A DNA stretch of 64,000 bases from Schmidtea polychroa (GCA_044892525.1 CM097885.1:119040001-119104000), one strand, 5' to 3'. Positions 6,466-57,840 are shown, numbered from the stretch's first letter. Numbers and translations are program-made. The notes: generated from the sequence alone by a model not told the origin.

Positions 6466-6474
6466 CGGGTTAGC

Positions 6475-9808: not shown

Positions 9809-9815
9809 GAATATA

Positions 9816-18866: not shown

Positions 18867-18869
18867 TCG

Positions 18870-30848: not shown

Positions 30849-30855
30849 TATATTC

Positions 30856-34757: not shown

Positions 34758-35106
34758 CTAATTTTCGTTGGAGATTTATTAAATATCTCGCTGCACCACT
34801 TTTACACTGTGAGACCATAAGTAAATCGTCTTGTTTATTTAGATTCGAAATTAATGAAGCATGACAGCCGTCAAAAGGTTTGAATGTAGAAATAAAATTA
34901 TAATTTCAGTGATATCTACCCTACCCCAATCAGCATCCACGCCTTCAAACAGATATGTTCGTCAGTGCCCCGTCAAAAAAAAACCGTTTCATAGGCTTCC
35001 GATGTCAAAGTCACCACAGAAGATGAAACAAAAACTGAGTCCAGACAATAATTGTGAAGGGATAATCACATCAAAATGTGGATTTCGAGGACGAAAATTC
35101 TTTTTT

Positions 35107-35119
35107 AAGAGGGGAGATA
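35107..35119 (+). promoter_or_regulatory. Polypurine tract
   Basis: AAGAGGGGAGATA directly before the 3' LTR. Confidence 0.85.
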
Positions 35120-36149: not shown

Positions 36150-36153
36150 GTAT

Positions 36154-36870
36154 GAATCTGGAGAAAAGCTCACAGCCTGCGAAAGTAAAGATCTTGATGG
36201 TTTCATGCTTGCTGAAGATTTGCAATCATTGAGTTCCATAATTCCTGCAGCCACCTACAACGATCCTGTTAAGATTTTGCAGTTTCTGTTAGTAAACAAG
36301 CGCTATAGTGACTTTCCTAACACACACATTGCACTTCGAATACTTCTAACTATTTCTGTCACTGTTGGTTCCGGGGAAAGAAGCTTTTCGAAATTTAAAC
36401 TTATTAAAATATAATATATGCAATATATGCAATCAACAATGATTCAAGATCGGCTTAGTAACTTAGCTATTTTGTCAATCGAGAATGATGTTGCTAAGGA
36501 TCTTGACAATAATGAACTTATTACAGATTTTGCAGCAGTCAAAGCTCGCAAGATTTGCTTGTAAGTTGTAAGTAGAAGATACAACCAAACCAACGCTATA
36601 GTGTATATAGTTTATAATTTAGAGTTATATATGAACTCTTAATTTGCATGTCAAAACAAAACATTTTAATTATTAATTTTTTTTTGAGTTGTATGATCTT
36701 CAATTAAATGAATAAAACTGTAATTATTGATGTGTCAACGCTGTTATAGAATAAAAATTTAAGTATTTTAATTTTTTATTTCCCATTATTTTAATATATG
36801 TAGAAATGTAATTTTTTGCATGGGCCCCGCTCATCATTTGCTGCCTTGGGCCCGCATGCCCTAGGGCCGA
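36154..36870 (+). pseudogene. hAT transposase 3' part (dimerisation domain) and element end
   Basis: FPNTHIALRILLTISVTVGSGERSFSKFKLIK...STMIQDRLSNLAILSIE, stop at 36563; GC-rich subterminal GGGCCCCGCTC...GGGCCCGCATGCCCTAGGGCC. Confidence 0.9.
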
Positions 36871-38745: not shown

Positions 38746-40329
38746 ATGATGGTGATAAGTTTTAATGGTGATAAATTTAATTGATAAATTTAATTAATTT
38801 CTTGATAATTAGTTGTATTTTATTGAATTGTTTTTAAATTTTAAATTAATTTTATTGACAATTAGGTTAATAATTAAGTGATAGAATAAATTTTTGATGA
38901 TAACTTTGTAATATATTTGACTAAATAATGTTTTCAATAATTTTCTAAGAATATTTACACATTGATGAACTTTAAAAAACATAAGCTAAGAAACCAGTTA
39001 ACTTTATCAAGGACTTTAAATTTACTTGATAATTATTGTAGGATACTGAAATTTAGTTTGCTGTTACCGCTTGAAAATGATTGGTTGAATAGCTGAAGAA
39101 TTATGATCAAACAATATATATCATCTCTAGTTAGGTATTTGATGGGTGAAATATTTGTAGGAAATAATGAGTTTATTATGTCTGTTACATAAGTCGACTT
39201 TAGCGTCAAAATGTGTTTTTAAAATATATTTAAATTTTAAAATACCACAACGTAATATATTTTTTCCCTGCCCTTCCATGATTTTGATTGGTTAGTGGGC
39301 TCTTATTATTTAGCTTCTAAATTATTTCAATGGAAGAATATTTGGTGTCTTTAACAGTTAATGAAAAGTTATATTTTTGAAGTTCTTTAAGGATTTTAAG
39401 AGCTGGGATATTGTCGGTGAGATTTAATGAGAGGTCGGTTAAGATGAGAATATATGATTTTTTAAGGGTGATGTTGGTAAAATATCAATGTTTTAAGGGA
39501 AATTGCAATACATTAGTCAGTTATGAATCAATAATAATGTGAAATTATATCGTTTTATTAGGCTGTGATTAATGCACAGTAAATTAATTTAGAACAATGT
39601 TTTATTAAGTAGAGATGATGATCGATTTACTTGGTTTTGACAATGAAATCTTTACAGATAATTGGGATTGATGTCAACTTTAAATTATTTCTCTTTGACA
39701 ATTATTAACTTATTAAAATTTCTATTTAAAATTAGCTTAAAAAATTATTCCATAAAAGTTTCTATTAAAATTTGACTTAAAAAATTATTTCTTAAAAATT
39801 TCATTTTAAATTTTTATTTCTCAGAAGCGGTTGGTTATTCCAACTTTTTGTTAATAAATTTTAATTTAAAGTTTTGAACCTATAATTTAAAAATAAAACA
39901 TTAAGTTACCTATTTATCCTTGTATTACTTTATTTAAAATTTTTTACCATAATTTACAACCAAATATAACCCTTATTTTCATATTTAACCAATAATTTCA
40001 TGTAGTGAATGATTAATTGACAATGATTTGCATCTTTAATTACTATTGAAAAATAATACATAAAAATTTCCATCTAAAATTAACATTGAAAAATAATTCA
40101 TAAAAATTAACTTTAAAAAATAAATTATTTCATTAAAATTTTCATCTAAAATTAACACTGAAAAATATTTCATAAAAATGTATATTAAAAATTATCTTAA
40201 AAAATATTCGTTAAAAATTTTCATTTAAAATTTTCAATTCTCAATCACCAACTATTATTCCAACTTTTTGTAAATAAATTTAAAAATCTAACTTTAATTT
40301 ACTTATTACATTACTTAAATTTACTTATT

Positions 40330-40930
40330 TAACTTTAATTTAAAGTTTTTGACCATTGATTACTTAATTTTAAATTTTGATTCTTAATTAACTTTAATTT
40401 TTTTTTTAGAACCTTAATTAACTTATTTGAGCCCATTGATTACTTTAATTTAAATATTTGGACCTTAATTTACTTATTTGAACCCATTGATTGCTTTAAT
40501 TTTAAATTTTAGACCATAATTAACTTATTTGAACCCATTGATTAATTTAATTTAATTTTTTAGAACCTTAATTAACTCATTTGAACCAATTGATTACTTT
40601 AATTTAATTGTTTTTTAGGATCTTAATTTACTTATTTCAGCCCATTGATTACTTTAATTCAATTATTAGACCCATAATTTACTTTAGTTTCTTAATTTGA
40701 ACCCATAATTTACTCTAATTCAATTTTTAGACCCATAATTTACTTTAATTCAAAAATCTGAGCCCATAATTTACTGTAATCCAATTTTAAGACCCATAAT
40801 TTACTTTAATTCAAAAATCTGAGCCCATAATTTACTGTAATCCAATTTTAAGACCCATATTTTACTTTACTTCAAAAATCCTAGCCCATAATTTGCTGTA
40901 ATTTAATATTTTGGATCCATAATTTACTTT
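40330..40930 (+). repeat. Degenerate tandem array, ~37-41-bp unit
   Basis: Recurring AATTTACTTTAATTCAAAAATCTGAGCCCAT / TTTGAACCCATTGATT units. Confidence 0.8.
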
Positions 40931-40949
40931 AATTCAAAAATTTACAATG

Positions 40950-41340
40950 CTTTTTTTAGTGAAGACCACCTTTTTCTATTGAAAATATCCTGAGACCTTA
41001 AATTACCATGGCTTTTTTAGTGATAATCAGATTTTGTATTGAAAATCCTAGGACCAAGGAGACCCACCCAAATAATACTGACTTATCCTTTGCTTTTTGT
41101 ATTGAAAATATCCTGAGACTTTAAATTACCACTGTTTTTTTAGTGTAGACCACCTATTTGTATTGAAAATATCCTGAGACCTTGAATTACCATGCTTTTT
41201 TAGTGTAAACCGTCTTTTTGTATTGAAAATCCCTGGACTATGGAGATCCCTTCACTATAGTCTGAATAATCCATGCTTTTTTAGTGTAGACTACCTTTTT
41301 CTATTGAAATTCTTAGGACCAAGGAGACCCACCCAAATAA
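40950..41340 (+). repeat. Degenerate tandem array built on TTTTTTAGTG.AGAC.ACC and ATTGAAAATATCCTGAGAC motifs
   Basis: Motifs recur at about 40950, 41015, 41135, 41195 and 41278. Confidence 0.7.
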
Positions 41341-41816
41341 TACTTATCCTTGGCTTGTTTATTGAAAAAAAATTTTTTGTATTTAAAATCCCAGAAAAAA
41401 ATCATTGGAGCGTACGGCAAAAATTATGTAATCAAAATGATGTCTACGGCAAAAATTATGCAATCAAAATTTGCAACATTTTTTAACCCCCCCCTATTGC
41501 TGCCGGGAGCTCCTAACTACCTACTCAGCTTCTATAATAATTTTTATTATAATCAGTAGAAAAACCTTTTCAAAATGTCTAAATTTAACAAAAATGTTGA
41601 TTTTCATCAAAAATGAATAATTGTCAACTCATCACTACGTGGAATTGATGATAATTTAAATTACAATGAAAGACTAATGAATTCTTATTTACAAAACATT
41701 CTTCTTTTAATTGATTACTACTGACTTATTATTGCAATGTAAAAATCACATTCAATAAATACTTATTGTTGATCAGTTTTATTATATATACTCCGACAGG
41801 ATGTTTTGACCCCCTA

Positions 41817-41887
41817 AGGGTACTGGTCATAAAGGTACTGGTCGTAAGGGTATTAGTCGTAAGGGTATTAGTCGTAAGGGTATTGGT
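41817..41887 (+). repeat. 15-bp minisatellite (GTCGTAAGGGTATTA)
   Basis: Four to five tandem degenerate copies. Confidence 0.8.
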
Positions 41888-44205
41888 AACTCTCAACCAC
41901 CACCTACCCATTAACTAGTTACCATGTACTAACAACTAGGTCTCAAACAACTAAATACTAAACATTTACAACCACATACTAACAACCACCATCAAAACCC
42001 ATCGAGGAATTAACAAATGTCAACCTACAACTAAATACTTACAACCAGATACCTGCTACCAAGTACTTACAATTAGAAACCAAGTACCAACAATCAACTA
42101 ACAACACATAAAAATAATAGCAATTAAATACAAAATATTCTTCATCACATACACTATCTTCTTATCAAAATCTAAAAAGTCAACCAACTACTTACAACCA
42201 ACAACTATGTACTAACAAATTGATCTTTAAAATAAAATACTCGTCACTTGAAAAATTAGATGGAAAATTATTTGAACTCAAGGCATAACTTGGTAAAAAT
42301 TGATTAAATTATTGTAAAAATTTAAATTATTCAAAACATACTAAATAAAAAAATATAATTAATGGACAAGAAAGAACATTAAATTTGAATCATTAAGTCA
42401 CTTGCAAGATTTGTAAGATACTGGATAGTAAATAAAAAATACTAATCATTCAAGTTAATATGAATCAACTAAGATAATAAATTAATAAAATTTTAAAATA
42501 AGATCTAGTAGATAATTGATTTAGATTGAATAAATTAATTGAAATAAAATTAATTTTAATTATTTTTTTAAAAGTAATACATGTACTCAAATTGATTGAC
42601 TGATTGCTCAAAATATTCAAAAAAAACAGTATAAATTCATTACAATTATCAAAGTCAGCAATCTACAATAAAAATAATTATCATTAAATTCCAAAAGAGA
42701 CTAGATAACTAATGATAACATCTAATAAACCAGTAAATTCATTTAAATGACAATAATTGGTATATTCAAGCGAATTCTCTAATAAAATCATCTAAAAAGC
42801 ATCAAATTTCATATATATTCATATATTCCCCTCAAACTAACAAGATTCCTTAAAATCCCTTAAATGACTATATTTCAACCCTTAATTCATATTATTACAA
42901 ATATCATTTAAAAAGCATCAAATTTCCTTGAAATAACTCTATCCTTAAAGATTGATATTTTAATGATAAGTACCCGTAAAAGATCATATATTCCCCTCAG
43001 ACTAATAAGATTGCTTAAAATCCCTTTAAATGACTATAATTCTAACTTTAATTCCTATTATCATACATATTTCACTATTGATAAAACCAGTTACAATTAA
43101 ATTTTTGTTAATCACTGTAAATTTTTTTAAATCATTGTACTCGAAATTTAAAATAAATATAACTGACTAGGTCCCATTGAAAGATTAAATTTATCCATTC
43201 AATAAAATATATTTCTTCAAATGGTCAACTTTTGTCGTTGTCCGTCTAAATAAAGATAAAAATAATTTAAAGTTGACATCAATCCCAATTATCTGTAAAG
43301 ATTTCATTGTCAAAACCAAGTAAATCGATCATCATCTCTACTTAATAAAACATTGTTCTAAATTAATTTACTGTGCATTAATCACAGCCTAATAAAACGA
43401 TATAATTTCACATTATTATTGATTCATAACTGACTAATGTATTGCAATTTCCCTTAAAACATTGATATTTTACCAACATCACCCTTAAAAAATCATATAT
43501 TCTCATCTTAACCGACCTCTCATTAAATCTCACCGACAATATCCCAGCTCTTAAAATCCTTAAAGAACTTCAAAAATATAACTTTTCATTAACTGTTAAA
43601 GACACCAAATATTCTTCCATTGAAATAATTTAGAAGCTAAATAATAAGAGCCCACTAACCAATCAAAATCATGGAAGGGCAGGGAAAAAATATATTACGT
43701 TGTGGTATTTTAAAATTTAAATATATTTTAAAAACACATTTTGACGCTAAAGTCGACTTATGTAACAGACATAATAAACTCATTATTTCCTACAAATATT
43801 TCACCCATCAAATACCTAACTAGAGATGATATATATTGTTTGATCATAATTCTTCAGCTATTCAACCAATCATTTTCAAGCGGTAACAGCAAACTAAATT
43901 TCAGTATCCTACAATAATTATCAAGTAAATTTAAAGTCCTTGATAAAGTTAACTGGTTTCTTAGCTTATGTTTTTTAAAGTTCATCAATGTGTAAATATT
44001 CTTAGAAAATTATTGAAAACATTATTTAGTCAAATATATTACAAAGTTATCATCAAAAATTTATTCTATCACTTAATTATTAACCTAATTGTCAATGAAA
44101 TTAATTTAAAATTTAAAAACAATTCAATAAAATACAACTAATTATCAAGAAATTAATTAAATTTATCAATTAAATTTATCACCATTAATACTTATCACCA
44201 TCACA

Positions 44206-47200
44206 ATGTGCTTAAAAGATAAAACCGGCAGGATATGTAAAATGAACGCGATAATCAGATGTCCAGAGAAAATAATAGTACCAGCAAATTCGCAAATGAT
44301 ATGCCAGATTAAAGTAGATACGGGCATGGAAGGGGAAGTTATTTTCGAACCAAGTAAATCCTTTGAAAAGAGACGAGAGTTACCACTAGCAAGAGAGATA
44401 ATAACAATAAACCAAGAAGGAGTAATACCGATCAACATCACAAATTTCGAAGAGGAAGGCAAAATTATCGATGAAAATGAAAGACTGGGTAAATTGACTC
44501 CAATGATGGATATAGAGTTACCAAAAGTGACCAACGAAACAGCAAAAGATTACGAATTATGGACAATCGACAGTACATTGTTGACTGTCACCGAAAAAGG
44601 AAAATTACACAAGCTATTAGTAGAATATAAAGATATATTTGCCATCTCATATTTAGATTTGGGTACATTTGATGTTACCCTACATGCAATACCACTGATA
44701 GATGAAACTCCAATTGCGTCGAGACCATACAAACTAGCAGAAATGCAAAAAGAAATAGCTGAAGCAGAAGTACAAAAAATGCTAGATGCAAAAGTAATCG
44801 AACCAAGTTGCTCAACCTGGCAGTTTCTAGTGGTCATGGTGAAAAAGAAAGATGGCACGTAAAGATTCTGTATCGACTATCGAAAATTAAACGCAGTAAC
44901 AAAGAGGGATACCTACCCATTACCAGACATCAATGAGATGTTACTTATGTTGCAAGGGGCAGCATATTTTACGTCTTTAGATTTAAAAAGTGGATACTGG
45001 CAGATTAAAGTCAAGGATGAGGACAAAGAAAAGACCGCTTTCACGTTGGGACGAGATCTATATCAGTTCAGAAAAATGCCATTCGGACTGACCAACGCAC
45101 CAGCATCGTTCCAAAGGTGTGTGAACTTCGTCACTCATGGAATCAAACAATGTATGGTATATATTGATGATTTACTAATATATTCAGCGACATTTGAACA
45201 ACATCTGGAGGATATCAGAAATGTATTTATACGCTTACGACAACGGAAACTCGAACTCAAACCTTCAAAATGCGATTGGGCAAAAGAGAAAGTTACGTTC
45301 TTAGGACATATAGTGTCAGCCAAAGGAAAAGAGCCAGATCCACGAAACATCGAAAAAATAAAAACATGCCCAGCACCAAAAACCGTCACGCAAGTGCAAG
45401 AATTCCTAGGATTATGTGGATATTACCGAAAATTCATCAAAAATTATGCAGGAATTGCGAAACCAATCCAAGAATTAGTAAAGAAAGATATCTCGTTCAT
45501 TTGGGAAAAGGAACAGCAAGAGGCATTCGAGACGTTGAGAGATAAATTGATTGAAGCACCAATCCTAGTACACCCATATTTCAAGAAGCCATTTCTATTG
45601 GCAACCGACGCAAGCGGATATGCAGCATGAGCAATTTTAGGACAACTAGATGACGAAGGAAAAGAGAGAGTAATCGGATATTACAGTCGAACGTTCAAAA
45701 AACACGAGAAGAACTATTCAGTAACCGAAAGAGAAGCATTGGCTATAATACAAGCAATCAAACATTTCCGATATTTGCTATGGGGACACGAGATATGCAT
45801 AACCACAGATCATCAACCATTAGTGTGGTTAGGGCAACATAAAGAAGCGTCAAGTAGACTGATGAGATGAGCCATGCATATAAAATTCAAAGCAGGAAGA
45901 GCAAATGCCAATGCCGACTGCATGTCGAGGTTTATTTTCCCAGATTTGGTGGATCAAGAAATGCAACGGATATGTCTAATAGTAGCAGAAGATTTAGATT
46001 TTTGTCAATTACGAAAAGATCAGCAAGAAGATGCAGAATTAAAGCAAATTATTGATTATGTGAAAACGGGAAAACCAGATGTGTATGAGAAAGACCAAAA
46101 ATTAAAAGAACATATGGACAAACACTGACATCGATACGTCATAGAAAAAGATTGGCTGTTGATAATGGATGGAGAAAAGCGATTAATGTGTATACCGGGA
46201 AATAGACGGAAAGATCTATTGACACAATATCACGATGGTAGATTGGGAGGACATATGTCATCAAAAAAGACGTTAGCGAGAATGAAACAGAAATATTTTT
46301 GGCCTACATTAACCGAGGACGTAACAGAATGGGTGAAAAATTGTCTAACTTGTGCAACCAGGAAAAACACTGGATCAAAATGGAAAGCACCGTTAACGCC
46401 AATGCCGGTACCGATAGAACCTATGACGATGATATCGATGGACGTAGTTGGTCCATTACCCGAATCAGATAGAGGAAATGTCTTTATTTTAGTAATTACG
46501 GATTACCTCACGAAATTCCCAGAAGCATTCGCTATGCCAGATCAAAAAGCTAAAACAATCGCAAAAATACTGGTAGAGGAGATATGTTGCCGGTACGGAA
46601 CGCCAAAACAAATACTAACAGATCAAGGAACTAATTTCATGAGTGAAATAATGAGTGAAGTGACTAACTACTTCAAAATCGCAAAGTTGAGAACATCACC
46701 GTATCACCCCCAAACAAACGGGATGACGGAAAGATTCAATGGAACACTCATTCAAATGCTGTCGAATTATGTCGACCGGCACCAACGAGATTGGGACGAA
46801 TATATAAATCTGTGCCTTATGGCGTACAGAATGTCAATACATGCATCTACGAAAATGAGCCCATTCAAATTAATGTACGGAAGAGAATGTAACATGCCAA
46901 TGGACCTGGAATACCAACCACCAATATCGCAATATATGGAGATAGGCGATTACGTCACAAAATTCAAAGAAAGAATGCAGGAGATTTGGGAAACGGCAGG
47001 GTTGAATATCAAGTTTTACCAGGAAAGTTGTAAAGACTTACACGATCGAAAGAAAAATGTGAAACAACATACATTCCAGACAGGCGATTGGGTAATGATA
47101 GAAACACCCGAATTAATTCCAGGAACCACCAAAAAATTACAATGGAATGGAAAAGGGCCATACGAGATTCTATTTGTAGGTGAAACCAACGTGAGAGTAA

Positions 47201-47643
47201 AGTTGGTAAATAACCCGTTCACCAGGCCAATATACGTCAATGTGGCACGTTGTAAACCAATCCCAAAAACAGCCACCAGTCAACCAGAAGGCCGTACGTT
47301 AACCACACGTTCGCAAACCTACAGAATGAACATGATGCAGCAGCTCGCAGAACCAATAACCGGACAATTGGGTATACAACCATCGGAAGCCGAAAAGATT
47401 GTAAAAGATGTAAAAATTAAAATACCCGGATGGGCAAAAGATAGACTAGATTTCGAAATATTAGGCGGTCTATTGACAATGATCGAAAATTACGCAAACA
47501 GAGAAAGAACACATCCATTATTACGAGTAGTTAAAAGTCAATGGCCAACATTACTTACAATAACAGATCATTATGGAGACACACCATTACATAAACTCAT
47601 GAAAGTAGGCAACATTGAGCAAATACTAGAAACAATAGAATAA
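44206..47643 (+). pseudogene. pol: Pol: post-protease domain, RT, RNase H, integrase
   Basis: RFCIDYRKLN, MPFGLTNAPASFQR, YIDDLLI, TDASGYAA, TDHQPL, HDGRLGGH..CLTC, SMDVVGPLP, LTDQGTNF, NGMTERFNGTL, GKGPYEI; in-frame stops at 44860, 45628, about 45868 and 46126. Confidence 0.97.
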
Positions 47644-49092
47644 TTTCACTACTGCAAGAGATCAACAGAACAAGAAAACAACCAAGGCTACACACCATTA
47701 ATGATAGCAGCAAACAAAGGCAAAACAAAAGACATTATAACAGCATTACTTGAAACAGGATCGAAAATAACTACACAAGATCATGACCAGAAAAATGCGC
47801 TACATCACGCAATCGAAGGGGAAAATGCAGAAACATTCATAACGCTGATGGAACTACTATCATATGAGGATAACCGAGAGGTCGGAAACATGTATGACGG
47901 ACTACTGACGGCGATCAAAGAGAAACTAACAACAATCACCGGAATATTAATTGCATGGAGGAACCCAATTAGAAATGATTATATGATAGACGTAAACGAA
48001 ACATTCACAAGAGGGGAAAATACGTTAATGAAGGAAGCAATGAAAGGACATCATTTATTCGAAATCCCAAACCAATTATTAGAACGAGGGATAAAGTTCA
48101 CAAACCATAAAGATGAGCAGCTATTAAAAAAGCGAATCGACATATTCGAAAAATCAATATTTCAATTCATTAACAAAGTGCGAGATAAATATTGGGAAAC
48201 GGTAAGCGTGTTATATATGATGGACACGATGAACAACATTCGCGAGAATTACTTAGACATTATTCAAGTACTTATAGCAGAAGAACGAATCAATAACTCA
48301 ACCGGAAAGAAAATAAAAATAAAGAAATGGGCATCAAAGGAACCAAAGTCGCAAACGAATCAAACTACAACAAATAAAGTCATTGAAACAAGACCGACAA
48401 ATTCAGATCATGAAACAATAATACGCAAAGCTAAAGAGGTGTTCTTCGAAGAAATGCAAGAGTTATCAGACGAAATGATATTATCAAAAATCATAAAAAC
48501 CGTGCATACATATGCAAGAGATCAAACAACGAATTTAGATATCGGGAAAATCAAAACCTTCATGCCACGAGCATTTACGATGTCGACAAAGGATCAAAGA
48601 ACACCATTGCAACAGGCAATATTGGCAGCAAAAGAAAACCGAGCAATAACGATCATAAGAATCCTCAGAGATTTGGGTGAGGAAACTAACACGAAAAACG
48701 AACAAGGCGAAACAGCCATGATGTATGCAGCTATAACAAAAATACACCCAAAAACATTACATATATTACATCAATCGGGATCGAGACTAGATGAAAAGTC
48801 AAACGAAGGAAACTCCACAATGGATTGGGCAACCATACAGCCAAACCTAGAAATGATCAGATTCCTCTGCAAAAATGCGACAAAAGAGGAAGTTGAAAAC
48901 ATCTGCAAAAATACATCTCAATTCCAGTGGAATACTGTAAGGAAAAATCTAGAAGCAATGAAGCTATTATTAACATGGAAAGTACCGCAAAGTAATAAAT
49001 ATGCGATAAATATAAACGAATTCTATGAAAACGGGGAAAATGCGATGGTAAAAAACACATTAACCAAAGGGGGGACACAAAAATCATACTAA
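47500..49092 (+). CDS. Ankyrin-repeat extension of Pol (two clusters), one in-frame stop at 47641
   Basis: YGDTPLH, QGYTPLMIAA, QKNALHHA, QRTPLQQA, QGETAMMYAA, EGNSTMDWA. ORF 47701 is in frame with integrase ORF 46159 across a single TAA. Confidence 0.85.
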
Positions 49093-49537
49093 TTGTATTA
49101 AATAGAGAAAACCTGAGATTCACAAAAAAACAGAACGAACAACAACGAATTGGAAAACACCGCCGTGTAAAGAGAATTAGTAAAAGAATGGAACAGGAAA
49201 AGACATGCAGCAACCGGGAGAAAGTAGTTCGAATTTGAAGCTAAACTAGCAAGAAATAGAGTACTGACAGCATACCGAAGACTGTTTGAACGATATAAAT
49301 GTCGAGGACGACATTTTAAACGACAGCGGGGGAGACAAATACGACGATAATGACGGAAAAGGTCGAAAGGAAGACAGAGAGAAAAGAAAACCGGAGGAGG
49401 ATAACCAAGGAAACAAAGACTCAAATATGGAAAAGGAGGGAAACAACCTGGAAAACAAGATGAAAGAGGAGGAAAAAACAAATGATGGAAAACAGAGGGT
49501 ATGCCTACCTATCACCAACAAAGAAATAGAAACGAAC

Positions 49538-50377
49538 ATGATATTGATGATACTTGTGCTAACCATGATAGAGATAGTAACAGCTCATGGAGGGATGAGA
49601 ACGATAAAAGAGACCAAAGAAGCGGAAAATCACGACAATAAAGAGGAAGAACTAAAACAGGAAAAGAAAAAGCAAGTACAAGAACAACAATGGGATCTAA
49701 AAGAAAGGTGTATACTAGGAAGATGCATGTCTAGAACATATCAGAGACTAGTGCTGATAAATGAAGATACGGAACCAATAACGGGAGTGGGAATACAGGA
49801 AGCGTACCAACATCGAAACGGGAAGAGAATAACGAAAGTTAAATGGAAAGAGATACACCTAGGAAAAGGAGGTGAGATAGCAATAACACAACTTCAACCA
49901 AGGAAAGAACACAAAGTTTGTATTTCAAGGTTAGGACCAGGAGAGTACTGTCTACAATATGTAACACAGCAACAACCACCAAAGGAATATACGGTCTGTA
50001 TTTTGAGAAAAAGACCAGAAAAGGAATGCCGACGATATCCGGGGAAAAGGGGAAAGAAAAGAAAGATCAATGACAAAGGAGAAGAAGAAGGGAAACGCAA
50101 GAAAACCAATGAGAAAAACCAAGACAATTACGTGTCAGAAGAGGAAATGGAAAAAATACAAAAAATGGCAAAAGAAGGAATTAACGAGGAAATAGCAAGA
50201 ATACGAGGGTTGGAGAAAGGAAAAGCCAATGCAGAAAAAGAAAACGAGAAAAGTACTGAAGTAGGGAGTACCATTACAAACAATGGAAAATCAGAAATTA
50301 TCAGCGTAAACCAGATGATATGGATCAGTGGAATAATAATAACCGGTGCGTTCATAACCATAACGGGGGGACGATAA
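49538..50377 (+). CDS. Predicted type I membrane protein with FN3-like ectodomain
   Basis: Signal-like MILMILVLTMIEIVTAHG; KVKWKE..IAITQLQPRKEHKVCIS (FN3-like); C-terminal MIWISGIIITGAFITITGG. Confidence 0.55.
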   Translation: MILMILVLTMIEIVTAHGGMRTIKETKEAENHDNKEEELKQEKKKQVQEQQWDLKERCILGRCMSRTYQRLVLINEDTEPITGVGIQEAYQHRNGKRITKVKWKEIHLGKGGEIAITQLQPRKEHKVCISRLGPGEYCLQYVTQQQPPKEYTVCILRKRPEKECRRYPGKRGKKRKINDKGEEEGKRKKTNEKNQDNYVSEEEMEKIQKMAKEGINEEIARIRGLEKGKANAEKENEKSTEVGSTITNNGKSEIISVNQMIWISGIIITGAFITITGGR

Positions 50378-50849
50378 AAATAATCCGAGATAAACAACAG
50401 CGTAGCAAACTCGAAATGATCAGAGTCAGAAATTTCCAACATCGGGTAAAAAGACCCAGTAAAATAAGCCAAGAGCAGTGGATGGAGGCCTGGAATGCGC
50501 AGCGCCCTCCGAATCTACAAATATAGAAAGGGTTATGACTGTATATAATTGTAAAAAGTAAGTATATCTTATGTATATAACAGTATCATATTCTTATATA
50601 AGCGCGGTATTAATATTATATAACGATCGGGAGAAATAAACAATATAAAATTAAATAAGACAAAGATTGAGAGTGTGTATAAAATTAAGAATGGAGCAAG
50701 GAAACAACGAAATAAACCACAACACAGCAACCGAAGACATGTGGAAGCAACAATTCGCCCTATTAGCACAATTAGTATCTAATCTGCAGGAGCAAGGACT
50801 TACGATGTAAAGAAACTTAGTCGACAGTCTAAACAAAGGATTTAGTTAT

Positions 50850-51050
50850 TTGAAAATAATTGAGGATCAGAGGACAAAAATCGAACAAATGCAAAGAGAG
50901 TTAGAGCGGATAACACGATACAGCCAGAGACAAGAAGATGAGTTAGTAAGAATGGCGGAGGAAGCAGAACAAGAGGAGATGGAAGACTGGTCAGAATGGT
51001 TAATGAGGAGAGAAGAGGGCGGACAGGAGGCCGACTCTTCTGAACCATAA
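50850..51050 (+). CDS. Small acidic coiled-coil ORF
   Basis: Heptad-like EQMQRELERITRY...EDELVRMAEE; non-ATG start in the track. Confidence 0.35.
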   Translation: MKIIEDQRTKIEQMQRELERITRYSQRQEDELVRMAEEAEQEEMEDWSEWLMRREEGGQEADSSEP

Positions 51051-51134
51051 ACAAAACCCAAACTAGGTGTAAATAATTGTAAATAAAATATTGAACCTAT
51101 ATCGATAAGAAACTATATGTATATAATTGTAGAC

Positions 51135-52523
51135 ATGGATAAGCAAAGAAGAGAGGAGTTTAACGAAATCATCGAACTAGTCAGAAATTCCACAGCAATC
51201 AAAATACACAAGCATGTTATGTGTGGGATATGTGAAAAGTTGTTAAAGGAACCCCATCAAACCAAATGCGGATGCAGATTATGCAAAGAATGCATAAAAG
51301 AGGCAATAAAGAGTAGACCACAGTGGTGTCCGGTATGTAAAGAAACCCTGATATCAAGTCTGGAAGATACCAATGAGGATAAAGCCGCAGTAAAAGATAT
51401 GTTGAACGCTAATCTGGGATGTAAAAATACCCCATGCGAATGGAAAGGACTAATATGGAAAGTAAAACAACATATAAAGGAATGTATATACCGAGTCAGC
51501 CAATGTGACCGATGCCAAAAAAAAATCCAAGCCAACGAAGAAAGAGAACATCAAAGCCAATGTGAGGAAAGGCTAGAAAGATGTGAATATTGCGGCGAAA
51601 CAGACACAAGGAAAAATCTAACCCCCAAACATCACAATGTACAAGAGGAAAAGATATGTGCAGAATTCTGTGGTGAGTGTCCAAATGGATGTAAAACAGG
51701 CGGAATGGTAAAAATAGCCCAACATCTAAAGGAATGTGAAAAGAAAAGAATAATATGTGTATTAGGCAAATGGGGCTGTCAGAAACTACTGCACCAAGGA
51801 GAATTGCTACACCATTTAACAGAAAACGTATCAACTCACGCAGAGATGTGGTCAACCGCGTTGCAAGAAAATGAAGAAAAAGTTCAACAAATGGAGATAG
51901 AAATAACATCGTTGAAAGCATTGGTAAAAGAACTGTTAGAAGAAAGAGAAGCCTTCGAAGAAGCCCGAGCAAACATAAAGATGCAAATAAATCGGATAGA
52001 AATCAGTAATAATCAGGCCAAGGTGCTGCATCAAAAGATAAACGAAATAAATCTCAATGAGGTAATACCAACAACACCCTACATATGGAAAATAACGGGA
52101 GTGAAAGAAAAAATACGAAAAGCAAAAATTGGGGAAGATACAAGAATAACAAGCCCCGCATTTCATTCGTGGAAGAACGGATATAAAATGAAAATAAAGA
52201 TATACCCCAACGGGGACGGAACCGGATTGGGGACACACTTCTCTATATTCTTTCTATTATGTAAAGGAGAACATGATGAGATAATAGAGTGGCCGTTTCA
52301 GGCAAAAAACGATATCACAATAATGAATGACCAAAGCATACACGAACAAAGCTTCAAAACAACGGGAAACCAGCTATGTTATCAGAGACCTCTTGAAGAA
52401 GAAGGAGCAGCAACGGGAGCACCTACGTTCATTCTACAACGGAAGTTAGAGGATATGGCAAGAAATGACACGATATATATAAAAATGTCAGTGAGAAAAG
52501 ACGGGAAGGGTAGAACAGAATAG
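51135..52523 (+). CDS. TRAF: TRAF-family protein (RING, TRAF zinc fingers, coiled coil, MATH), intact and intronless
   Basis: CGICEKLLKEPHQTKCGCRLCKEC...CPVC (RING); CKNTPCEWKG..HIKEC, CDRC..HQSQC, CEYC, CPNGC..HLKEC, CVLGKWGC..H (zf-TRAF); coiled coil; YIWKI..SPAF..GYKMKIKIYPNGDGTGLGTHFSIFFLLCKGEHDEIIEWPF..YQRP..NDTIYIK (MATH). Confidence 0.95.
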   Translation: MDKQRREEFNEIIELVRNSTAIKIHKHVMCGICEKLLKEPHQTKCGCRLCKECIKEAIKSRPQWCPVCKETLISSLEDTNEDKAAVKDMLNANLGCKNTPCEWKGLIWKVKQHIKECIYRVSQCDRCQKKIQANEEREHQSQCEERLERCEYCGETDTRKNLTPKHHNVQEEKICAEFCGECPNGCKTGGMVKIAQHLKECEKKRIICVLGKWGCQKLLHQGELLHHLTENVSTHAEMWSTALQENEEKVQQMEIEITSLKALVKELLEEREAFEEARANIKMQINRIEISNNQAKVLHQKINEINLNEVIPTTPYIWKITGVKEKIRKAKIGEDTRITSPAFHSWKNGYKMKIKIYPNGDGTGLGTHFSIFFLLCKGEHDEIIEWPFQAKNDITIMNDQSIHEQSFKTTGNQLCYQRPLEEEGAATGAPTFILQRKLEDMARNDTIYIKMSVRKDGKGRTE

Positions 52524-52873
52524 CTAGCGTGAATAATGTTGTATATAATTAATTTGTATATATCGGTGTATATAACCAATAAAATAGTATATAATAATGG
52601 TATGGGAACCTCAAATACGACAACCAAAAATGAAGCGAAAAATCCATGAAAAACATTAATTGAATAATAAAATTATTACTACGATAAAAATTTAACCAAG
52701 GTATATAATTTAGAAATGACACAAGAGAAAATAGCCACAAACAACGAGGGCCCAGCAGCAATCAGAATTAGTGGGGAAATCAAGAGGAAATGGAACAAAG
52801 TAATGTTCCAATTAACCAACCTAACCCGGAACCACATTGAAGAAGCTAGGGAATACGAGAGTAATAAATATCG

Positions 52874-53755
52874 ATGAACAATTTGAGAGCCGAAGCAGAA
52901 GCATGTAAAAGAGCCTCGAAGTGGGCGGCGCTAGAAAATACTCGCCAGGAAGCACACATCCATTACTTGAAACAGCTGGTGCAGGAAGCAAGGAAAAGAC
53001 TAACCGACGAAAACACAAAACGAGAAGCAGAAAAGCAAAAGGAAGAGAGGAAAATGAATCAACTATTGGCAGAAGACAGGAAATGGAAGCGACAGAGCAG
53101 AGAGATAAAAAAGGAAATGAGAGAATTGCCACAAAAACTAGGTTTTGAAAACGAGCAAGGCAAATGGGAAGAAATTCTGGACCAAAAGGAGGAATTAAAG
53201 CGACTGAGAAAGGTCGCCGCCCGCAGTCAAACATGGCAGACCAAGGCCATGGAGTTTGAAAGGCACTTGGCGATGAAAATCTCCATAAAGGAACACGAAA
53301 ACGCTGCAATGGAAGAGATGATCCTACAGCAATCATGACGGATCGTGGAACTAGTAAATAAAGTCGCCGAACTAGAAAGAGATAACAATGGATATAAAGG
53401 AGCTCTGGAACAGAGAAATATGATAGTGGCGGGGAAAAATAAAAAGCTGGAGAACGAAAGAAAAATGTATAATGAAAACATCAAAAATTTGGAGATAAAG
53501 ATCGAAAAATGGAAAAGCGATGAAAAGATAAAGGAACTAGATAAGCAAATAGAGGTGAAAGATGATGAGACGAGATACCTCACCTATTTGCACGACGAAG
53601 AGCTGAATATAACCAGAGAATTAAGAGACGATGTTCACGAGCTGAGGGCTCAAATTCCTCAATACCAGATACCATACGACCCCATTGCTATCCAGCTACA
53701 GTCATCGGTCGAGAGCGATGAGAGATACGTGGGTCAAGAAGAAACCTTCGTATAG
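52874..53755 (+). CDS. Coiled-coil accessory ORF, one in-frame stop at 53336
   Basis: Two in-frame E/K/R-rich ORFs (154 aa and 136 aa) separated by a single TGA. Confidence 0.6.
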
Positions 53756-53925
53756 AAACTAATAAAAAGACAAAAATATAAAATCGGGACCTATATCCCA
53801 AACAAAAAAATTAAAAGTATAGTAAAAGTATCTAAGGGACTGTAACCCTGATTATCTAAAAATGCATATAAATGTATAAGTATAAGCCGCATTGTAGCGC
53901 ACTATTAATTGTAAATATTGTAGAC

Positions 53926-54351
53926 ATGAAGATTGAAGAAATAATAGAACCCATGATTGAAGTAGAAGAAGGAGAAATTGAAGTAGAAACCACGGAAACA
54001 CAAATACTAAAGGAAGAATTATTGGAAGAGAAACGAGAAAACGAGAGACTGGTAAACAAATACATAGAAGATCGGAAAATAATAAAGGTGCTAAAGAAAG
54101 AATACAAAGTACTAGAGGAGGTAAAGAGAGAAACGGAGGAGAGAAACGAATGGCTGCAAGAACAACGAAAGCGAGGGAGAAATTGGGAAAAGATCGCGGA
54201 AGAATTATGGAAAGAAAGGGCAAGCTTCAAAGCGGAGGAAGTAATCGAAGGTTACTGGAAAACAGAGGCGAAAGAGCGCCAGGCAACCATAAACAAATTG
54301 AGTCAACAGTTGAAGGAAAAACAACAAGAAAGTGAAGAGATGAAGAAATGA
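53926..54351 (+). CDS. Coiled-coil accessory ORF
   Basis: ATG in the same GTAGACATG context as TRAF; E/K-rich heptads; degenerate continuation to about 54640. Confidence 0.55.
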   Translation: MKIEEIIEPMIEVEEGEIEVETTETQILKEELLEEKRENERLVNKYIEDRKIIKVLKKEYKVLEEVKRETEERNEWLQEQRKRGRNWEKIAEELWKERASFKAEEVIEGYWKTEAKERQATINKLSQQLKEKQQESEEMKK

Positions 54352-54680
54352 AGCCGCAAGTATAAGGAAATCGAAACGAAGCACCAGCAATAGCAGCATC
54401 GAAGAGGTAATCATCAGGAGCCCGAACAAGATTTCCTATAAATCGAACTAAAAAGAAACCTCGACAAGAAAGGGGAAGAAATAAGAAAACTAGAAAAGGA
54501 GATAAGACACTTGAAAAGGGAAGCACGTGAAAAAGATAGACAGTTAGAAATGCTACCCGAGTTAAGACACAGGGTCATTAAAGCAGAGTCTACCCTGATG
54601 AGAATCGCCGAAAATAACCCCAAAGGAGAACCGTCTAACTGAAAACCGTTAAAGCCAATTGTAAATATAATAAATAATAG

Positions 54681-55247
54681 ATGTATAACAGTATGATGCG
54701 GTGCGGAGTGATAGTCACACTGATAATATTGGCTAACAATCTGATGAGTAAGTCGCAGATCAATCCCCAGATAGATAACATCCGAGACCACAAAAGAAAG
54801 AACCCGAAAGCCGAATCCGAATCCTCCAAACGGGCATACCCCATCTCAGTAAAGATCAATATCGTGGACAACATCCGCTCAACCCGAGCCTATATCAACA
54901 ATGTCCGAATAATGTGCCGAGACAATCCCATATGTAAAACGATAAATAAAGTGATGATAGAACAGATCCATCACTTGGACCAGCTGGAATCACAAATACA
55001 GCAGGAAAATTTCGAACTAGAGAAAACCGAGAAATCCACAGAACCAGGCGACACACATCTCCTCTTATATGTGGTGATCGCGGAAACCATCCTCCTATGC
55101 CTTCTAAGTCAGAAAGAGATGTCAAGTCTCGACAACAACGAGAGAAGCCTCGCACCAAAACCCCCAAGAAGTGATCCTGACAAACCTTATCCCAACAACG
55201 TTCCGACCCAGAACGACCAATACCAAGATCAGTCAATCAAAAGCTAA
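54681..55247 (+). CDS. Small predicted membrane protein (signal peptide, CX5C, coiled coil, TM, Pro-rich tail)
   Basis: MMRCGVIVTLIILANNL; CRDNPIC; LLLYVVIAETILLCLL; AATAAA at about 55420. Confidence 0.55.
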   Translation: MYNSMMRCGVIVTLIILANNLMSKSQINPQIDNIRDHKRKNPKAESESSKRAYPISVKINIVDNIRSTRAYINNVRIMCRDNPICKTINKVMIEQIHHLDQLESQIQQENFELEKTEKSTEPGDTHLLLYVVIAETILLCLLSQKEMSSLDNNERSLAPKPPRSDPDKPYPNNVPTQNDQYQDQSIKS

Positions 55248-55523
55248 CAGTCAACTCTACCTTAACATTAATATCCCAACTCACCAACAGCCACCAGCAG
55301 AAACATCCGATTGTTGAACAGTATCTGAACTATAACGGAAACATTATCTGTGAAACTTTTATTGTATATTGTGATTCTTTATTGTGATTCTTACTTATCT
55401 TAACTTTGCCATTTGTCTGAATAAAAATTTGTTGTTGATTATTGTTTTACCTTTTTATGAATGAGTGAAGGTAGTTCGAATATGTAATTGCGGGACGCAA
55501 TTTTGATGGGTCCCCCAGTGATT

Positions 55524-56500
55524 TGTTGGGCTGAGTCGAAAGCATGGGTAGGAAAGTAGGACAAGCAAGATGTTAAAGAAAATAAAAATAAAATAAACAA
55601 ATTTAAAAATAAACTAGAATCAAAATACAAAAGAAACAATAATTAAAATATAAGAATTAAAACAAAAAATAAAAATAAGAAAATCAAAATAAGAAAATAA
55701 AATAACGAATAAAATGACGCAAAATTTAATAAATAATGAGGAAACTAAAGAAACAAAAAAAATATAATAAAAATAAGGAAAATAAGGAAAAATAACCAAA
55801 AAACAGAAAAGGTAAATTAAATTAGAAAAACTAAGCGGTACTCAATTCTGATTGGTCCGCACACATGAAAAATTAATATATAAGTAAGCACCAAAATCAT
55901 TAAAATCACGGCTAATTCAAAAAATTCTATAGGTAAGCAAACTTCGAAAATATCATGACGGTTAATTCAAAAAATTCTATAGGTAAATCCAGAAAACAGC
56001 AGCGACATACAGAAACTATTCAAGAAACCACCAGTACTAGAAATCGACATTCAAGGAGCAATCATTAGTAGGAATCAATCAGATTACTTTCGACAACGTA
56101 ACGATTAATTTCGACTCAGCCCTCATACCGATAACGATAGTAAGGAGATCTTTTATTTTTGAAAAGTTAAAAGTAATCATGGATATTTGTTAAATAATTA
56201 AAATTTTTGTTTAATGCGAATTTCTCTTCATTTGATCCTTTTTCTTTTCGTTTAATAATCTTAACAAGGTTAATAATTTAAATGTTTACATGTGATTGAT
56301 AATAATAAAGGACTTATTTAGAAATTTTTATGATTTGTTTCATGATCTAATTTTTTATGATTTACATTTTATGAGGAACGTGGAGTTGAGACGTTTCATG
56401 TCATGGTGTGAGGGGCCTTCGGGTGCTCAGCCGGTGGACATGAAACCTTTCAATCACGCAGTTGATTCGGGCCGTAATTTGGGGGCTTCCTCACGGGTCC
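55524..56500 (+). repeat. 3' LTR of element 4 (end not located)
   Basis: TGTTGGGCTG start shared with 61911 and 19897; ATTGG box near 55850; GGCCTTCGGGTG block shared with the LTR at about 20865. Confidence 0.55.
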
Positions 56501-57840
56501 GTCGCTGAAGGTCATCTAAATCTATTTAGGATAGTAGAACACAAGCTGCATAAGAAATTTTAAAAATCGTAAGAAAAGTAATGTTCACGGGTCACAGTGA
56601 TTGAGGGAGCTACCATCTTTATGCCTACAATGACTCTACAAACCAGCGGCATTATTCTTCGAAAAGTTCACGTCATCACCGTCTGTAAATCTGAATCTCT
56701 AATTCTTCCCTTGATGACTCGATTAACACTCATCTCCAGCGAAATTCTCCAACACCTTAAAGTTGAGCTCTCATTTTATTTTTCGGAGGTTAAGCCGATT
56801 CGAAATTTTCACCATGATATCTTGACATTCAGACGATAGAGCATAATAATAACATTGTTGAAAATTTTAATAACAAAACTGTATGTGTAACAATACTTTA
56901 TTTAAATACATTGGCAAATTCTGAACTACCTGCGTAAACATCTCCTATGCGATTCTTTCAGAATATTGGTCACTGAAGTGAAAGTAATAGATATCTTCTA
57001 GATGGTTTAGAGAGATTCCCCATCGCTTAATATATCCAACTCGAGAGAAATTGCAAATTATAGCAACGAATTCCAATTTTGCCGGTTAGATGCGAACTGA
57101 CAGAAGACGACATGATATCAAAAAAATTTTCCAATTCAACTCGTTATGGCAAGTAGAATTTCATCAAGTAAAACATGTGCATGTACATATTGTATCTGCT
57201 AGTGACGATAGTCATATGTGAGAATGCGTGAGAAATAACATAACTAACGAGTAACCATTAACAGTAGAAAGTTGCACCATAGGACGCACTCGGCAGAATT
57301 TTTATCGTTGTGTATAGTAGTGGGTGAGAATATTAGATAACAACTGCCATAAGGCACGTCACCCAGGCCGGTAATTCCCAGATTTTTGTTTTTGATAAAA
57401 ATTTTGTGTCATTAATCTAGATAATTGAGTAATCGACAGACGACTACTGTAGGCGATTCAAGTCCTTAAAGTCCAAATTTTAGAGATTTTCAATTAAGTA
57501 TTATAAATAATAATTGAAAAGTATTACAAATAATAATTAAAAAGTATTATAAATAATAATTAAACTTAAACAGATCTATCCGGGTAATTCCTTAGATCCT
57601 CATGTATAAAAATCGTCAAGCGGGAAAGGGAAAGCCTTGGGGAAAATAAACAGCTCTATATATATTATTTTTTTTTATTTTTATCTAAATTGTGATTTGG
57701 TATTTTTAAGAGAAATTCAGAAGTTACTAAATTCACTCAATTGCAGAATTTTCATACTTGACTTATTTGCATTCGTCAAGACAATAGTATATGTTATTAA
57801 TTAATTATGGTAAATAATATACAAAGTAGTAATGATTAGT

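What the first reader, a model, noticed from the sequence alone, without database searches (positions are those of the whole stretch)
51135..52523. Intact full-length TRAF gene carried by a retrotransposon
Seen: a complete RING-zinc finger-coiled coil-MATH ORF of 462 codons, intronless, with the same A-rich bias as pol, and open while pol has several stops. The RING has CGC where TRAFs usually have CGH. Established: TRAFs are TNFR/TLR adaptors and E3 ligases, and planarians have an expanded TRAF-like family. Inference: retroelement-borne TRAFs may drive part of that expansion, act as host-manipulating factors, or this copy is being domesticated.
Basis: partly seen in the sequence, partly recalled or inferred. 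Interest (0 to 1): 0.9.

Follow-up and report, generated by a model that had tools for sequence, protein, structure and literature searches.

The report
TRAF gene inside planarian gypsy retroelement
A complete, open TRAF (immune and cell-survival adaptor) gene sits among the extra genes of a dead, 5'-truncated gypsy-type retroelement in a planarian genome; this is real, but TRAF modules are already described in the planarian "Burro" retroelements, and nothing shows that this copy has been domesticated.

Summary
Bases 51135-52523 (+) are an uninterrupted 462-codon ORF with an all-Cys RING, five TRAF-type zinc fingers, a long coiled-coil helix and a TRAF-C/MATH domain. Sequence and predicted fold match TRAF2/3/5/6.

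It lies in a 12-kb A-rich block (44204-56126, +). The block holds gypsy RT-RNase H-integrase fused to ankyrin repeats, then a membrane-protein ORF, TRAF, coiled-coil ORFs, a second small membrane ORF and a candidate 3' LTR. Third-codon-position composition is the same in TRAF and pol. The spacers share the A skew and the flanks do not. A 15-nt polypurine-like motif occurs only just after pol-ANK and just before the candidate LTR. So TRAF is most likely an accessory gene of the element.

The element is a relic. Gag, protease start and 5' LTR are missing, and pol-ANK carries five in-frame stops. TRAF being open is not evidence of selection: 1.5 stops are expected, P(0)=0.23.

The idea is not new. 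Burro/GYPSM1 retroelements were reported in 2007, 2018 and 2019 to carry RING, Smc, MATH_TRAF_C, ankyrin, BIR and BCL2-like motifs. The difference here is a stand-alone TRAF ORF downstream of integrase-ankyrin. No sibling copy could be retrieved, so copy number and selection remain untested.

The parts
44204..56126 (+). Retroelement fragment, 5'-truncated. It contains pol-ankyrin, the accessory ORFs including TRAF, and a candidate 3' LTR.
   Evidence: Continuous A-rich strand skew (AT skew +0.29 to +0.53 in ORFs and +0.33 to +0.49 in spacers), against about 0 in both flanks. All ORFs are on the + strand. The left edge abuts a 944-nt inverted-repeat arm that ends at 44203.
44204..49089 (+). Broken pol polyprotein frame: pre-RT (protease-side) remnant, reverse transcriptase, RNase H, integrase (H2C2 zinc domain, DDE core, GPY/F tail) and a C-terminal ankyrin-repeat region. 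It has 5 in-frame stops and no frameshift.
   Evidence: Pfam RVT_1, RT_RNaseH, Integrase_H2C2, rve and Ank_2/Ank_4. An ankyrin repeat starts upstream of the first ATG of the ankyrin segment, so the repeats continue from the integrase frame. Stop count. No dUTPase or other family is found in the 233 aa before RT.
49220..49234 (+). Polypurine-like 15-mer, copy 1, just after the end of pol-ankyrin.
   Evidence: GAARGTAGTTCGAAT occurs only twice in the 64 kb, both times in this element on the + strand; 0.01 matches are expected by chance. Only about 20 nt around the motif align.
49286..50374 (+). Accessory ORF U1 (363 aa): charged N-terminus, two hydrophobic segments (near residues 80-100 and 344-363) and a Cys-containing middle. 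It may be an envelope-like or membrane-protein remnant.
   Evidence: ORF list and hydropathy. No Pfam family above noise.
51135..52523 (+). TRAF ORF, 462 codons plus stop, intact.
51222..51338 (+). RING finger (residues 30-68) with all eight ligands Cys.
   Evidence: Pfam zf-C3HC4. Alignment to the TRAF6/TRAF5 RING shows His to Cys and Asp to Cys at two ligand positions. Cys positions.
51420..51839 (+). Five TRAF-type zinc fingers (residues 96-235).
   Evidence: Motif scan. Alignment to TRAF6 RING-ZF1-ZF2 structures. Ligand columns are invariant among relatives. Foldseek TM 0.71 to 3hcs. Pfam zf-TRAF itself did not reach E 0.01 on this protein, but it does on the relatives P0001, P0014 and P0007.
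51828..52052 (+). Coiled-coil (TRAF-N) helix, residues 232-306.
   Evidence: A single long helix in the model with pLDDT 85-95. It aligns to the TRAF3 coiled coil.
52080..52493 (+). TRAF-C / MATH domain, residues 316-453.
   Evidence: Pfam MATH_2 at 1.4e-25 (profile 2-136 of 136) and TRAF-mep_MATH at 1.3e-24. TRAF2/3 TRAF domains at E about 1e-27. Foldseek probability 1.0.
52868..53752 (+). Coiled-coil accessory reading frame (U2/U3), with one in-frame stop.
   Evidence: Open segments lie in one frame. Only weak coiled-coil-type Pfam noise is found.
53872..54351 (+). Accessory ORF U4 (159 aa), Glu/Lys-rich and coiled-coil-like.
54681..55247 (+). Accessory ORF U5 (188 aa): hydrophobic N-terminus and one hydrophobic segment near residues 123-146.
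55467..55481 (+). Polypurine-like 15-mer, copy 2, after the last ORF.
55483..56126 (+). Candidate 3' LTR (low confidence). The start lies between 55483 and 55523. A 13-nt terminal inverted repeat sits at 55528-55540 and 56110-56122.
   Evidence: The exact inverted 13-mer is found only at these two places. The termini are TG...CA, and the TGTTG.GG... / ...GCCC..CA ends resemble those of the proven LTR pair at 29820/35120. The A skew ends here. No second LTR copy is available to confirm it.
38747..44203 (.). Neighbour: two 944-nt arms in inverted orientation (99.8-100% identical) around AT-rich tandem repeats. The right arm ends exactly where the retroelement fragment begins.

Best explanation
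The TRAF ORF is an accessory gene of a gypsy-type (Burro-like) LTR retroelement of a planarian. An ancestor of the element captured a host TRAF. The gene then travelled in the 3' accessory region, downstream of an integrase-ankyrin polyprotein, together with membrane-protein and coiled-coil ORFs.

The copy in this window is a dead fragment. The 5' LTR, gag and the start of the protease are missing, and pol-ankyrin is interrupted five times. Its TRAF frame is still open simply because too little time has passed for a stop to arise.

Mechanism in active relatives (inferred, not shown): the protein keeps every architectural part of a signalling TRAF. These are a zinc-binding RING for E2 recruitment, TRAF zinc fingers, a trimerising coiled coil and a receptor-peptide-binding TRAF-C. 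It would therefore join or compete with host TRAF complexes and bias NF-kB/JNK and cell-survival signalling in cells that express the element. The ankyrin repeats would act alongside it, as BIR and BCL2-like modules may do in Burro elements.
For: Shown:
- TRAF identity and completeness.
- Gypsy RT-RH-IN with fused ankyrin repeats upstream on the same strand.
- Identical third-position composition of TRAF, ankyrin and pol. The A skew persists through all spacers and stops at both edges of the block.
- No LTR-like repeat between integrase and TRAF.
- A 15-nt polypurine-like motif present only after pol-ankyrin and before the candidate 3' LTR, bracketing the accessory region; chance expectation is 0.01.
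- The nearest relatives form a separate clade within the sampled TRAF relatives (rough NJ tree, no support values). Five of six are decayed, with deletions or frameshifted tails, as expected for TE-borne copies.
- The window is planarian: the best named relatives are Dendrocoelum and Dugesia TRAFs, and there is a mir-753 hit.

Published precedent: Burro1/GYPSM1 carries RING(AIR1)-Smc-MATH_TRAF_C, ankyrin, BIR and BCL2-like motifs, and the D. tigrina element has MATH_TRAF_C in a separate accessory ORF (PMC6431247).

Neutral openness: 1.48 stops expected, P(0)=0.23.
Against: - No sibling copy was available, so recurrence of the pol-ANK-...-TRAF order is not shown.
- There is no LTR pair. The 3' LTR is only a candidate and has no clean polypurine tract directly at its edge.
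- In published Burro1 the TRAF module lies upstream of the protease, and in D. tigrina upstream of ORF1. Here it lies downstream of integrase.
- A second gypsy element in the window, about 50% identical in pol, shows no TRAF after its integrase, although an assembly gap interrupts that stretch.
- The function of the protein is pure inference.
Confidence: 0.72

Rival explanations
1. Composite junction. The TRAF and the ORFs around it come from a different part or a different copy of a Burro-like element, where the TRAF module lies upstream of the protease. Recombination, nested insertion with deletion, or mis-assembly then placed it behind this pol. It would still be TE-borne, but the order seen here would not be the element's native architecture.
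For: The published Burro1 and D. tigrina layouts put TRAF upstream of pol. The same fragment already shows one abrupt junction, at 44203/44204 next to a perfect 944-nt inverted repeat that could be an assembly or rearrangement product. The window has four N gaps.
Against: No compositional break, LTR or gag/zinc-knuckle sequence lies between integrase and TRAF or after TRAF. The polypurine-like motif pair brackets the whole accessory region. There is no N gap inside 44204-56126.
Confidence: 0.12
2. Host gene next to a TE. The TRAF is an intronless host paralogue or retrogene that merely lies beside a retroelement fragment.
For: Planarians have 121-282 MATH/TRAF transcripts (PMC6109357, PMC7586133), so chance adjacency is possible. 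The frame is intact. No sibling copy proves linkage.
Against: The TRAF lies 3.5 kb inside the skewed block, with about 3.6 kb more of the same skew downstream. Its synonymous-site composition equals that of pol, while the flanks have no skew. The motif pair brackets it. Its closest relatives are mostly degenerate copies.
Confidence: 0.08
3. Domesticated copy. The element died, but its TRAF is kept by selection as a host gene.
For: The ORF is complete and all zinc ligands and the full MATH profile are retained, while pol-ankyrin has five stops.
Against: P(0 stops)=0.23 under equal decay. The ankyrin segment (482 codons) and U1 (363 codons) are equally stop-free. There is no evidence of an orthologue, of expression or of a dN/dS signal.
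Confidence: 0.08

Closest known systems
[quoted passage not shown] 2018; reviewed in PMC6431247)
   Same: A planarian host and a gypsy-type RT-RH-IN. Host-derived regulatory modules include a RING + coiled-coil (Smc) + MATH_TRAF_C set and ankyrin repeats inside the polyprotein.
   Different: In Burro1 the TRAF module is part of the 4,873-aa ORF1, upstream of the protease. Here it is a separate ORF about 3.5 kb downstream of integrase. No dUTPase is found before RT, and no BIR or BCL2-like domain is found in the retained 12 kb. Direct sequence comparison was impossible because no Burro reference is held.
Burro-like element of Dugesia (Girardia) tigrina (PMC6431247)
   Same: MATH_TRAF_C is encoded by a stand-alone accessory ORF rather than inside the polyprotein.
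   Different: That ORF is described as upstream of ORF1. Here it is downstream of pol.
Host planarian TRAFs: Dugesia japonica TRAF-2-like A, Dendrocoelum lacteum TRAF-2 and TRAF-4
   Same: The same RING, zinc-finger, coiled-coil and MATH architecture, and similar length for the full-length relatives (the D. japonica entry P0017 is N-terminally shorter, 356 aa).
   Different: Only 28-32% identical. The window protein groups instead with P0004 and the decayed P0001/P0014/P0020 set at 36-41%.
Vertebrate TRAF2/3/5/6
   Same: TRAF-C at E about 1e-27 and 30-34% identity. The RING-ZF region aligns with TRAF6/TRAF5, and the predicted fold agrees.
   Different: The RING is all-Cys (C4C4) rather than C3HC3D. 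No TRAF_BIRC3_bd match was found.
Accessory-gene capture by retroviruses and large DNA viruses, such as the accessory ORFs of fish foamy-like ERVs (PMC6431247); viral IAP, vBcl-2 and ankyrin proteins (own knowledge)
   Same: A mobile or viral genome carrying host-derived regulators of cell death and innate signalling.
   Different: Here the captured gene is a complete TRAF adaptor/E3, and the carrier is an LTR retroelement of a flatworm.

Membership tests
TRAF protein family | N-terminal RING finger with eight zinc ligands | tested here: met
   Pfam zf-C3HC4 at residues 30-68. Aligned ligand by ligand with TRAF6/TRAF5. The variant has Cys at the His position and Cys at the final Asp position.
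TRAF protein family | TRAF-type zinc fingers between RING and coiled coil | tested here: met
   Five CCHC/CCHH units at residues 96-235. Alignment to TRAF6 ZF1-2. Foldseek TM 0.71 to 3hcs. Pfam zf-TRAF is below E 0.01 on this protein but hits its relatives.
TRAF protein family | Coiled-coil TRAF-N followed by TRAF-C/MATH beta-sandwich | tested here: met
   Helix 232-306 and strands 316-454 in the model. MATH_2 full-length match. TRAF2/3 TRAF domains at E 1e-27 and Foldseek probability 1.0.
TRAF protein family | Trimerisation, receptor-peptide binding and E3 ligase activity | not testable with these tools
   These would need biochemical or structural data on the protein itself.
Ty3/gypsy LTR retrotransposon | pol order RT - RNase H - integrase, with an H2C2 zinc domain, DDE core and GPY/F tail | tested here: met
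   Pfam RVT_1, RT_RNaseH, Integrase_H2C2 and rve in that order. GPY motif region in the integrase tail. Best database relatives are gypsy integrases.
Ty3/gypsy LTR retrotransposon | Pair of long terminal repeats with target-site duplication | tested here: inconclusive
   No direct repeat flanks the block. The 5' end is lost at 44204. Only a candidate 3' LTR with a 13-nt terminal inverted repeat is present.
Ty3/gypsy LTR retrotransposon | gag, protease and primer-binding site | tested here: not met
   Absent from this copy. The block starts inside the pre-RT region, and nothing related lies upstream of the inverted repeat. This is read as truncation, not as absence from the family.
Ty3/gypsy LTR retrotransposon | Polypurine tract before the 3' LTR | tested here: inconclusive
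   A purine-rich 15-mer at 55467-55481 is duplicated at 49220-49234, but it is not immediately adjacent to an unambiguous LTR start.
Burro giant retroelements | Host-derived modules (TRAF/MATH, ankyrin) carried by the element | tested here: met
   Ankyrin fused to integrase and a full TRAF ORF, against the description in PMC6431247.
Burro giant retroelements | dUTPase between protease and RT; BIR and BCL2-like modules; env between gag and pol | tested here: not met
   No Pfam family in the 233 aa before RT, and none of these domains in any ORF of the block. The region upstream of the protease is missing, so env and BCL2 cannot be judged.
Burro giant retroelements | Sequence similarity to the Burro1-4 / GYPSM1 references; total length above 30 kb | not testable with these tools
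   No reference sequence is held in any collection available here, and the copy is truncated.

The most novel reading that the evidence does not exclude
A sizeable share of the planarian 'TRAF-like' and ankyrin gene expansion consists of ORFs carried by gypsy/Burro-like retroelements such as this one. The expansion amounts to 121-282 MATH/TRAF transcripts, many of them partial. The same would apply to the 'genic' traf and ankyrin mRNAs that SMEDWI-3 piRNAs degrade by ping-pong. Part of what is read as host gene-family expansion and as piRNA control of host mRNAs would then be ordinary transposon biology. A few of these copies may have been recruited as real signalling genes.
Probability: 0.3. 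Interest if true: 0.6.

Novelty: new member of a known kind. Interest (0 to 1): 0.35.

Why it matters
Planarian papers treat the very large TRAF/MATH family as a host expansion relevant to immunity, survival and regeneration (PMC6109357, PMC7586133, PMC8807557). They report separately that piRNAs degrade many traf and ankyrin-repeat mRNAs (PMC6824462). This window shows, in one 12-kb fragment, a retroelement carrying exactly those two kinds of gene. If such copies are numerous, gene counts, RNAi off-target expectations and the reading of 'genic' piRNAs in planarians all need a transposon filter. In itself the finding re-discovers a published property of Burro-type elements. It adds an architectural variant, with a stand-alone complete TRAF downstream of integrase-ankyrin and an all-Cys RING.

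Tried and rejected
Searches for sibling copies or context all failed:
- The word-indexed protein search gave one distant hit for the single sequence and three for an alignment.
- Exact look-ups of the TRAF and of P0007 found no contig.
- The IMG/VR scan gave nothing.
- The integrase relative P0153 lies on a 3-kb contig whose downstream gene fragment is not TRAF-like.

The exhaustive representative search found 5,792 TRAF/MATH relatives, but none above 42% identity. The element's own family is therefore not in the collections.

P0007 is an unnamed database protein. In it an integrase GPY/F tail, very like the tail of the window's minus-strand gypsy element, runs in frame into a full TRAF. It looked like a second case of TRAF after integrase. 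It may equally be a chimeric gene model, and its TRAF groups with host-type TRAFs, so I use it only as a hint.

A shared AT-rich motif upstream of the accessory ORFs was examined and dropped, because it is no more frequent than chance and aligns poorly.

The Grohme et al. 2018 paper could not be read. The Rfam and tRNA scans gave nothing bearing on the element.

I also enumerated those segment bounds once in my working notes to myself while reasoning. These outputs show indirectly where the pol frame is interrupted. After noticing this I printed counts only.

Full report
**1. The observation**

Bases 51135-52523 on the + strand are one open frame of 462 codons plus a stop. An in-frame ATG six codons upstream (51117) is an alternative start. 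With the local composition (A .43, T .19, G .22), about 7% of random codons would be stops. An open run of this length is therefore not chance (about 1e-15, my arithmetic).

- Pfam finds a RING (residues 30-68) and a full-length MATH/TRAF-C domain (316-453, E 1e-25).
- A search of PDB sequences returns TRAF3, TRAF2, TRAF1 and TRAF5 TRAF domains at E about 1e-27. It returns TRAF6/TRAF5 RING-zinc-finger fragments at E 1e-15 to 1e-13.
- Five CCHC/CCHH fingers fill residues 96-235.
- An AlphaFold model built on 12 relatives (pLDDT 79) shows one long helix at 232-306 and a beta-sandwich at 316-454.
- Foldseek returns TRAF2/3/5 TRAF domains and the TRAF6 N-terminal domain (TM 0.71).

The His ligand of TRAF6/5 is Cys here, and the final Asp ligand of TRAF6 is also Cys, so the RING is all-Cys. 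The nearest relatives P0001 and P0020 keep the same CGC.

**2. The surroundings**

The ORF lies in a block, 44204-56126, with a strong excess of A over T on the + strand. The skew stops at both edges. From left to right the block contains the following.

- A pol frame with a pre-RT remnant, RT, RNase H and integrase (Pfam). It continues into ankyrin repeats. The first ankyrin repeat begins upstream of the first ATG of that segment, so the repeats belong to the pol polyprotein.
- A 363-aa ORF with two hydrophobic segments (U1).
- The TRAF ORF.
- Glu/Lys-rich coiled-coil frames (U2/U3, U4).
- A 188-aa ORF with a hydrophobic N-terminus and one membrane-like segment (U5).
- About 0.9 kb of non-coding sequence.

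The pol-ankyrin frame has five in-frame stops and no frameshift, and U2/U3 has one stop. The 5' end is lost. The block starts inside the pre-RT region, directly against the arm of a 944-nt perfect inverted repeat. Nothing element-like lies beyond that repeat.

**3. Is the TRAF part of the element?**

Evidence for:

- Third-position base use is the same in TRAF (.48/.16/.19/.16), pol (.47/.16/.19/.18) and ankyrin. All spacers share the skew, and the flanks have none.
- No LTR-like repeat separates integrase from TRAF.
- A 15-nt purine-rich motif (GAARGTAGTTCGAAT) occurs only twice in 64 kb. One copy is just after pol-ankyrin (49220) and the other just after the last ORF (55467), where 0.01 matches are expected by chance. 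This pattern would fit a central and a 3' polypurine tract, and it ties the two ends of the accessory region together.
- Downstream lies a candidate 3' LTR (about 55483/55523-56126). It has a 13-nt terminal inverted repeat and TG...CA ends like those of a proven LTR pair elsewhere in the window.
- The closest proteins among 1.8 billion representatives are only 36-42% identical. They form a clade with the window protein. Five of the six (P0001, P0014, P0020, P0088, P0152) are visibly decayed, as TE-borne copies usually are. The tree is a rough NJ tree without support values.
- The organism is a planarian. The best named relatives are Dendrocoelum and Dugesia TRAFs, and a mir-753 precursor is present.

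Evidence against or missing:

- No sibling copy could be fetched.
- The LTR is unconfirmed.
- A second gypsy element in the window, on the minus strand and about 50% identical in pol, has no detectable TRAF.

**4. What is known**

Arkhipova and Yushenova (PMC6431247) summarise earlier work. Jurka (2007) found RING(AIR1), Smc, MATH_TRAF_C, BIR and ankyrin motifs in GYPSM1, which is the same as Burro1. Grohme et al. (2018) found these plus a BCL2-like motif in Burro-2, -3 and -4. A Dugesia tigrina Burro-like element encodes MATH_TRAF_C in a separate accessory ORF. RING + Smc + MATH_TRAF_C is what a TRAF looks like to domain searches.

A TRAF in a planarian gypsy-type retroelement is therefore an established observation. 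The suggestion that such modules 'meddle' with host apoptosis and ubiquitination is likewise already published.

The differences here are:

- a complete, stand-alone TRAF ORF about 3.5 kb downstream of integrase-ankyrin, rather than upstream of the protease or of ORF1;
- no dUTPase before RT;
- no BIR or BCL2-like domain in the retained part.

Whether this is one of the named Burro families could not be tested.

**5. Selection and domestication**

I scaled the five stops of pol-ankyrin by the number of stop-creating substitutions available in each frame. This predicts 1.48 stops in TRAF, giving P(0)=0.23. The ankyrin segment and U1 are stop-free as well. The open frame therefore carries no signal of selection, and the copy sits in a truncated, decaying element. 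Domestication is possible but unsupported.

**6. Likely mechanism**

Shown: all structural parts of a signalling TRAF are retained.

Inferred: in active relatives the protein would enter or compete with host TRAF trimers and E2 enzymes. It would shift NF-kB/JNK and survival signalling in favour of cells that express the element, with the ankyrin repeats as a second module of that kind. This copy itself probably does nothing.

**7. Wider link (hypothesis)**

The planarian literature counts 121-282 MATH/TRAF transcripts, many of them partial (PMC6109357, PMC7586133). It also reports that SMEDWI-3 piRNAs degrade 'a multitude of traf mRNAs' and ankyrin-repeat transcripts by ping-pong (PMC6824462). 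In the passages I read, none of these papers mentions retroelement carriage.

This element carries both kinds of gene. Part of that expansion and of those 'genic' piRNA targets may therefore be retroelement ORFs. This was not testable here.

**8. Verdict**

It is a new member, and possibly an architectural variant, of a known kind, of moderate-to-low interest.

**9. Slip**

One search printed open-segment bounds that indirectly reveal where pol is interrupted, and I also enumerated those bounds once while reasoning. After noticing this I printed counts only.

Noticed in passing
window 38747-39690 and 43260-44203: Two 944-nt arms in inverted orientation, 99.8-100% identical. They enclose 3.6 kb of very AT-rich sequence with tandem repeats of about 51 and 61 nt (40000-41400). 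The right arm ends exactly at the truncated 5' edge of the TRAF-bearing element. This could be a foldback-type or long-TIR element, or an assembly artefact.
   Followed up: partly
window 49220-49234 and 55467-55481: A purine-rich 15-mer is present only at these two sites in the window, both inside the element on the + strand. It may be a central and a 3' polypurine tract.
   Followed up: partly
window 29820-36164: An LTR element with 1,045-nt LTRs that are 99.3% identical (29820-30861 and 35120-36164), with TGTTGAGG...CCCAACA ends and a purine tract before the 3' LTR. It has a 487-aa gag ORF (31161-32624), and no RT or integrase was detected. It is apparently a young non-autonomous element.
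   Followed up: partly
window ~4000-10840, minus strand: A second gypsy-type element, about 50% identical in pol to the TRAF-bearing one. Upstream of it is an LTR-like stretch (9693-10840) that is 84% identical to the LTRs of the gag-only element. It is decayed and interrupted by an N gap, and no TRAF or ankyrin is detectable after its integrase.
   Followed up: partly
protein P0007 (unnamed MetaClust/UniParc entry) versus window 6292-6546 (-): The first 55 residues or so of this 511-aa database protein are an integrase GPY/F tail very similar to that of the window's minus-strand gypsy element. The protein then continues in frame into a complete TRAF of the host-like clade. It is either another retroelement with TRAF right after integrase or a chimeric gene model.
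   Followed up: partly
window 11717-11777, minus strand: Rfam match to the mir-753 microRNA precursor, exactly at the gathering score (62 bits). I know mir-753 as a planarian miRNA family (own knowledge), which fits a planarian origin of the window.
   Followed up: no
window 49286-50374 and 54681-55247: Two accessory ORFs with membrane-like hydrophobic segments (U1: two segments with a Cys-containing middle; U5: hydrophobic N-terminus plus one segment). They have no family match and may be remnants of envelope-like proteins.
   Followed up: partly
window 17927-18893, plus strand: An isolated RT/RNase H fragment of a third, more distant gypsy-type element.
   Followed up: no
window 36205-36414, plus strand: A short ORF whose end resembles, by eye only, the C-terminal dimerisation motif of hAT transposases. 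No family search was run on it.
   Followed up: no
window 56380-56510: A GC-rich island with a 10-nt stem (GTTTCATGTC...GACATGAAAC) just right of the element. It has no Rfam family at gathering score.
   Followed up: no
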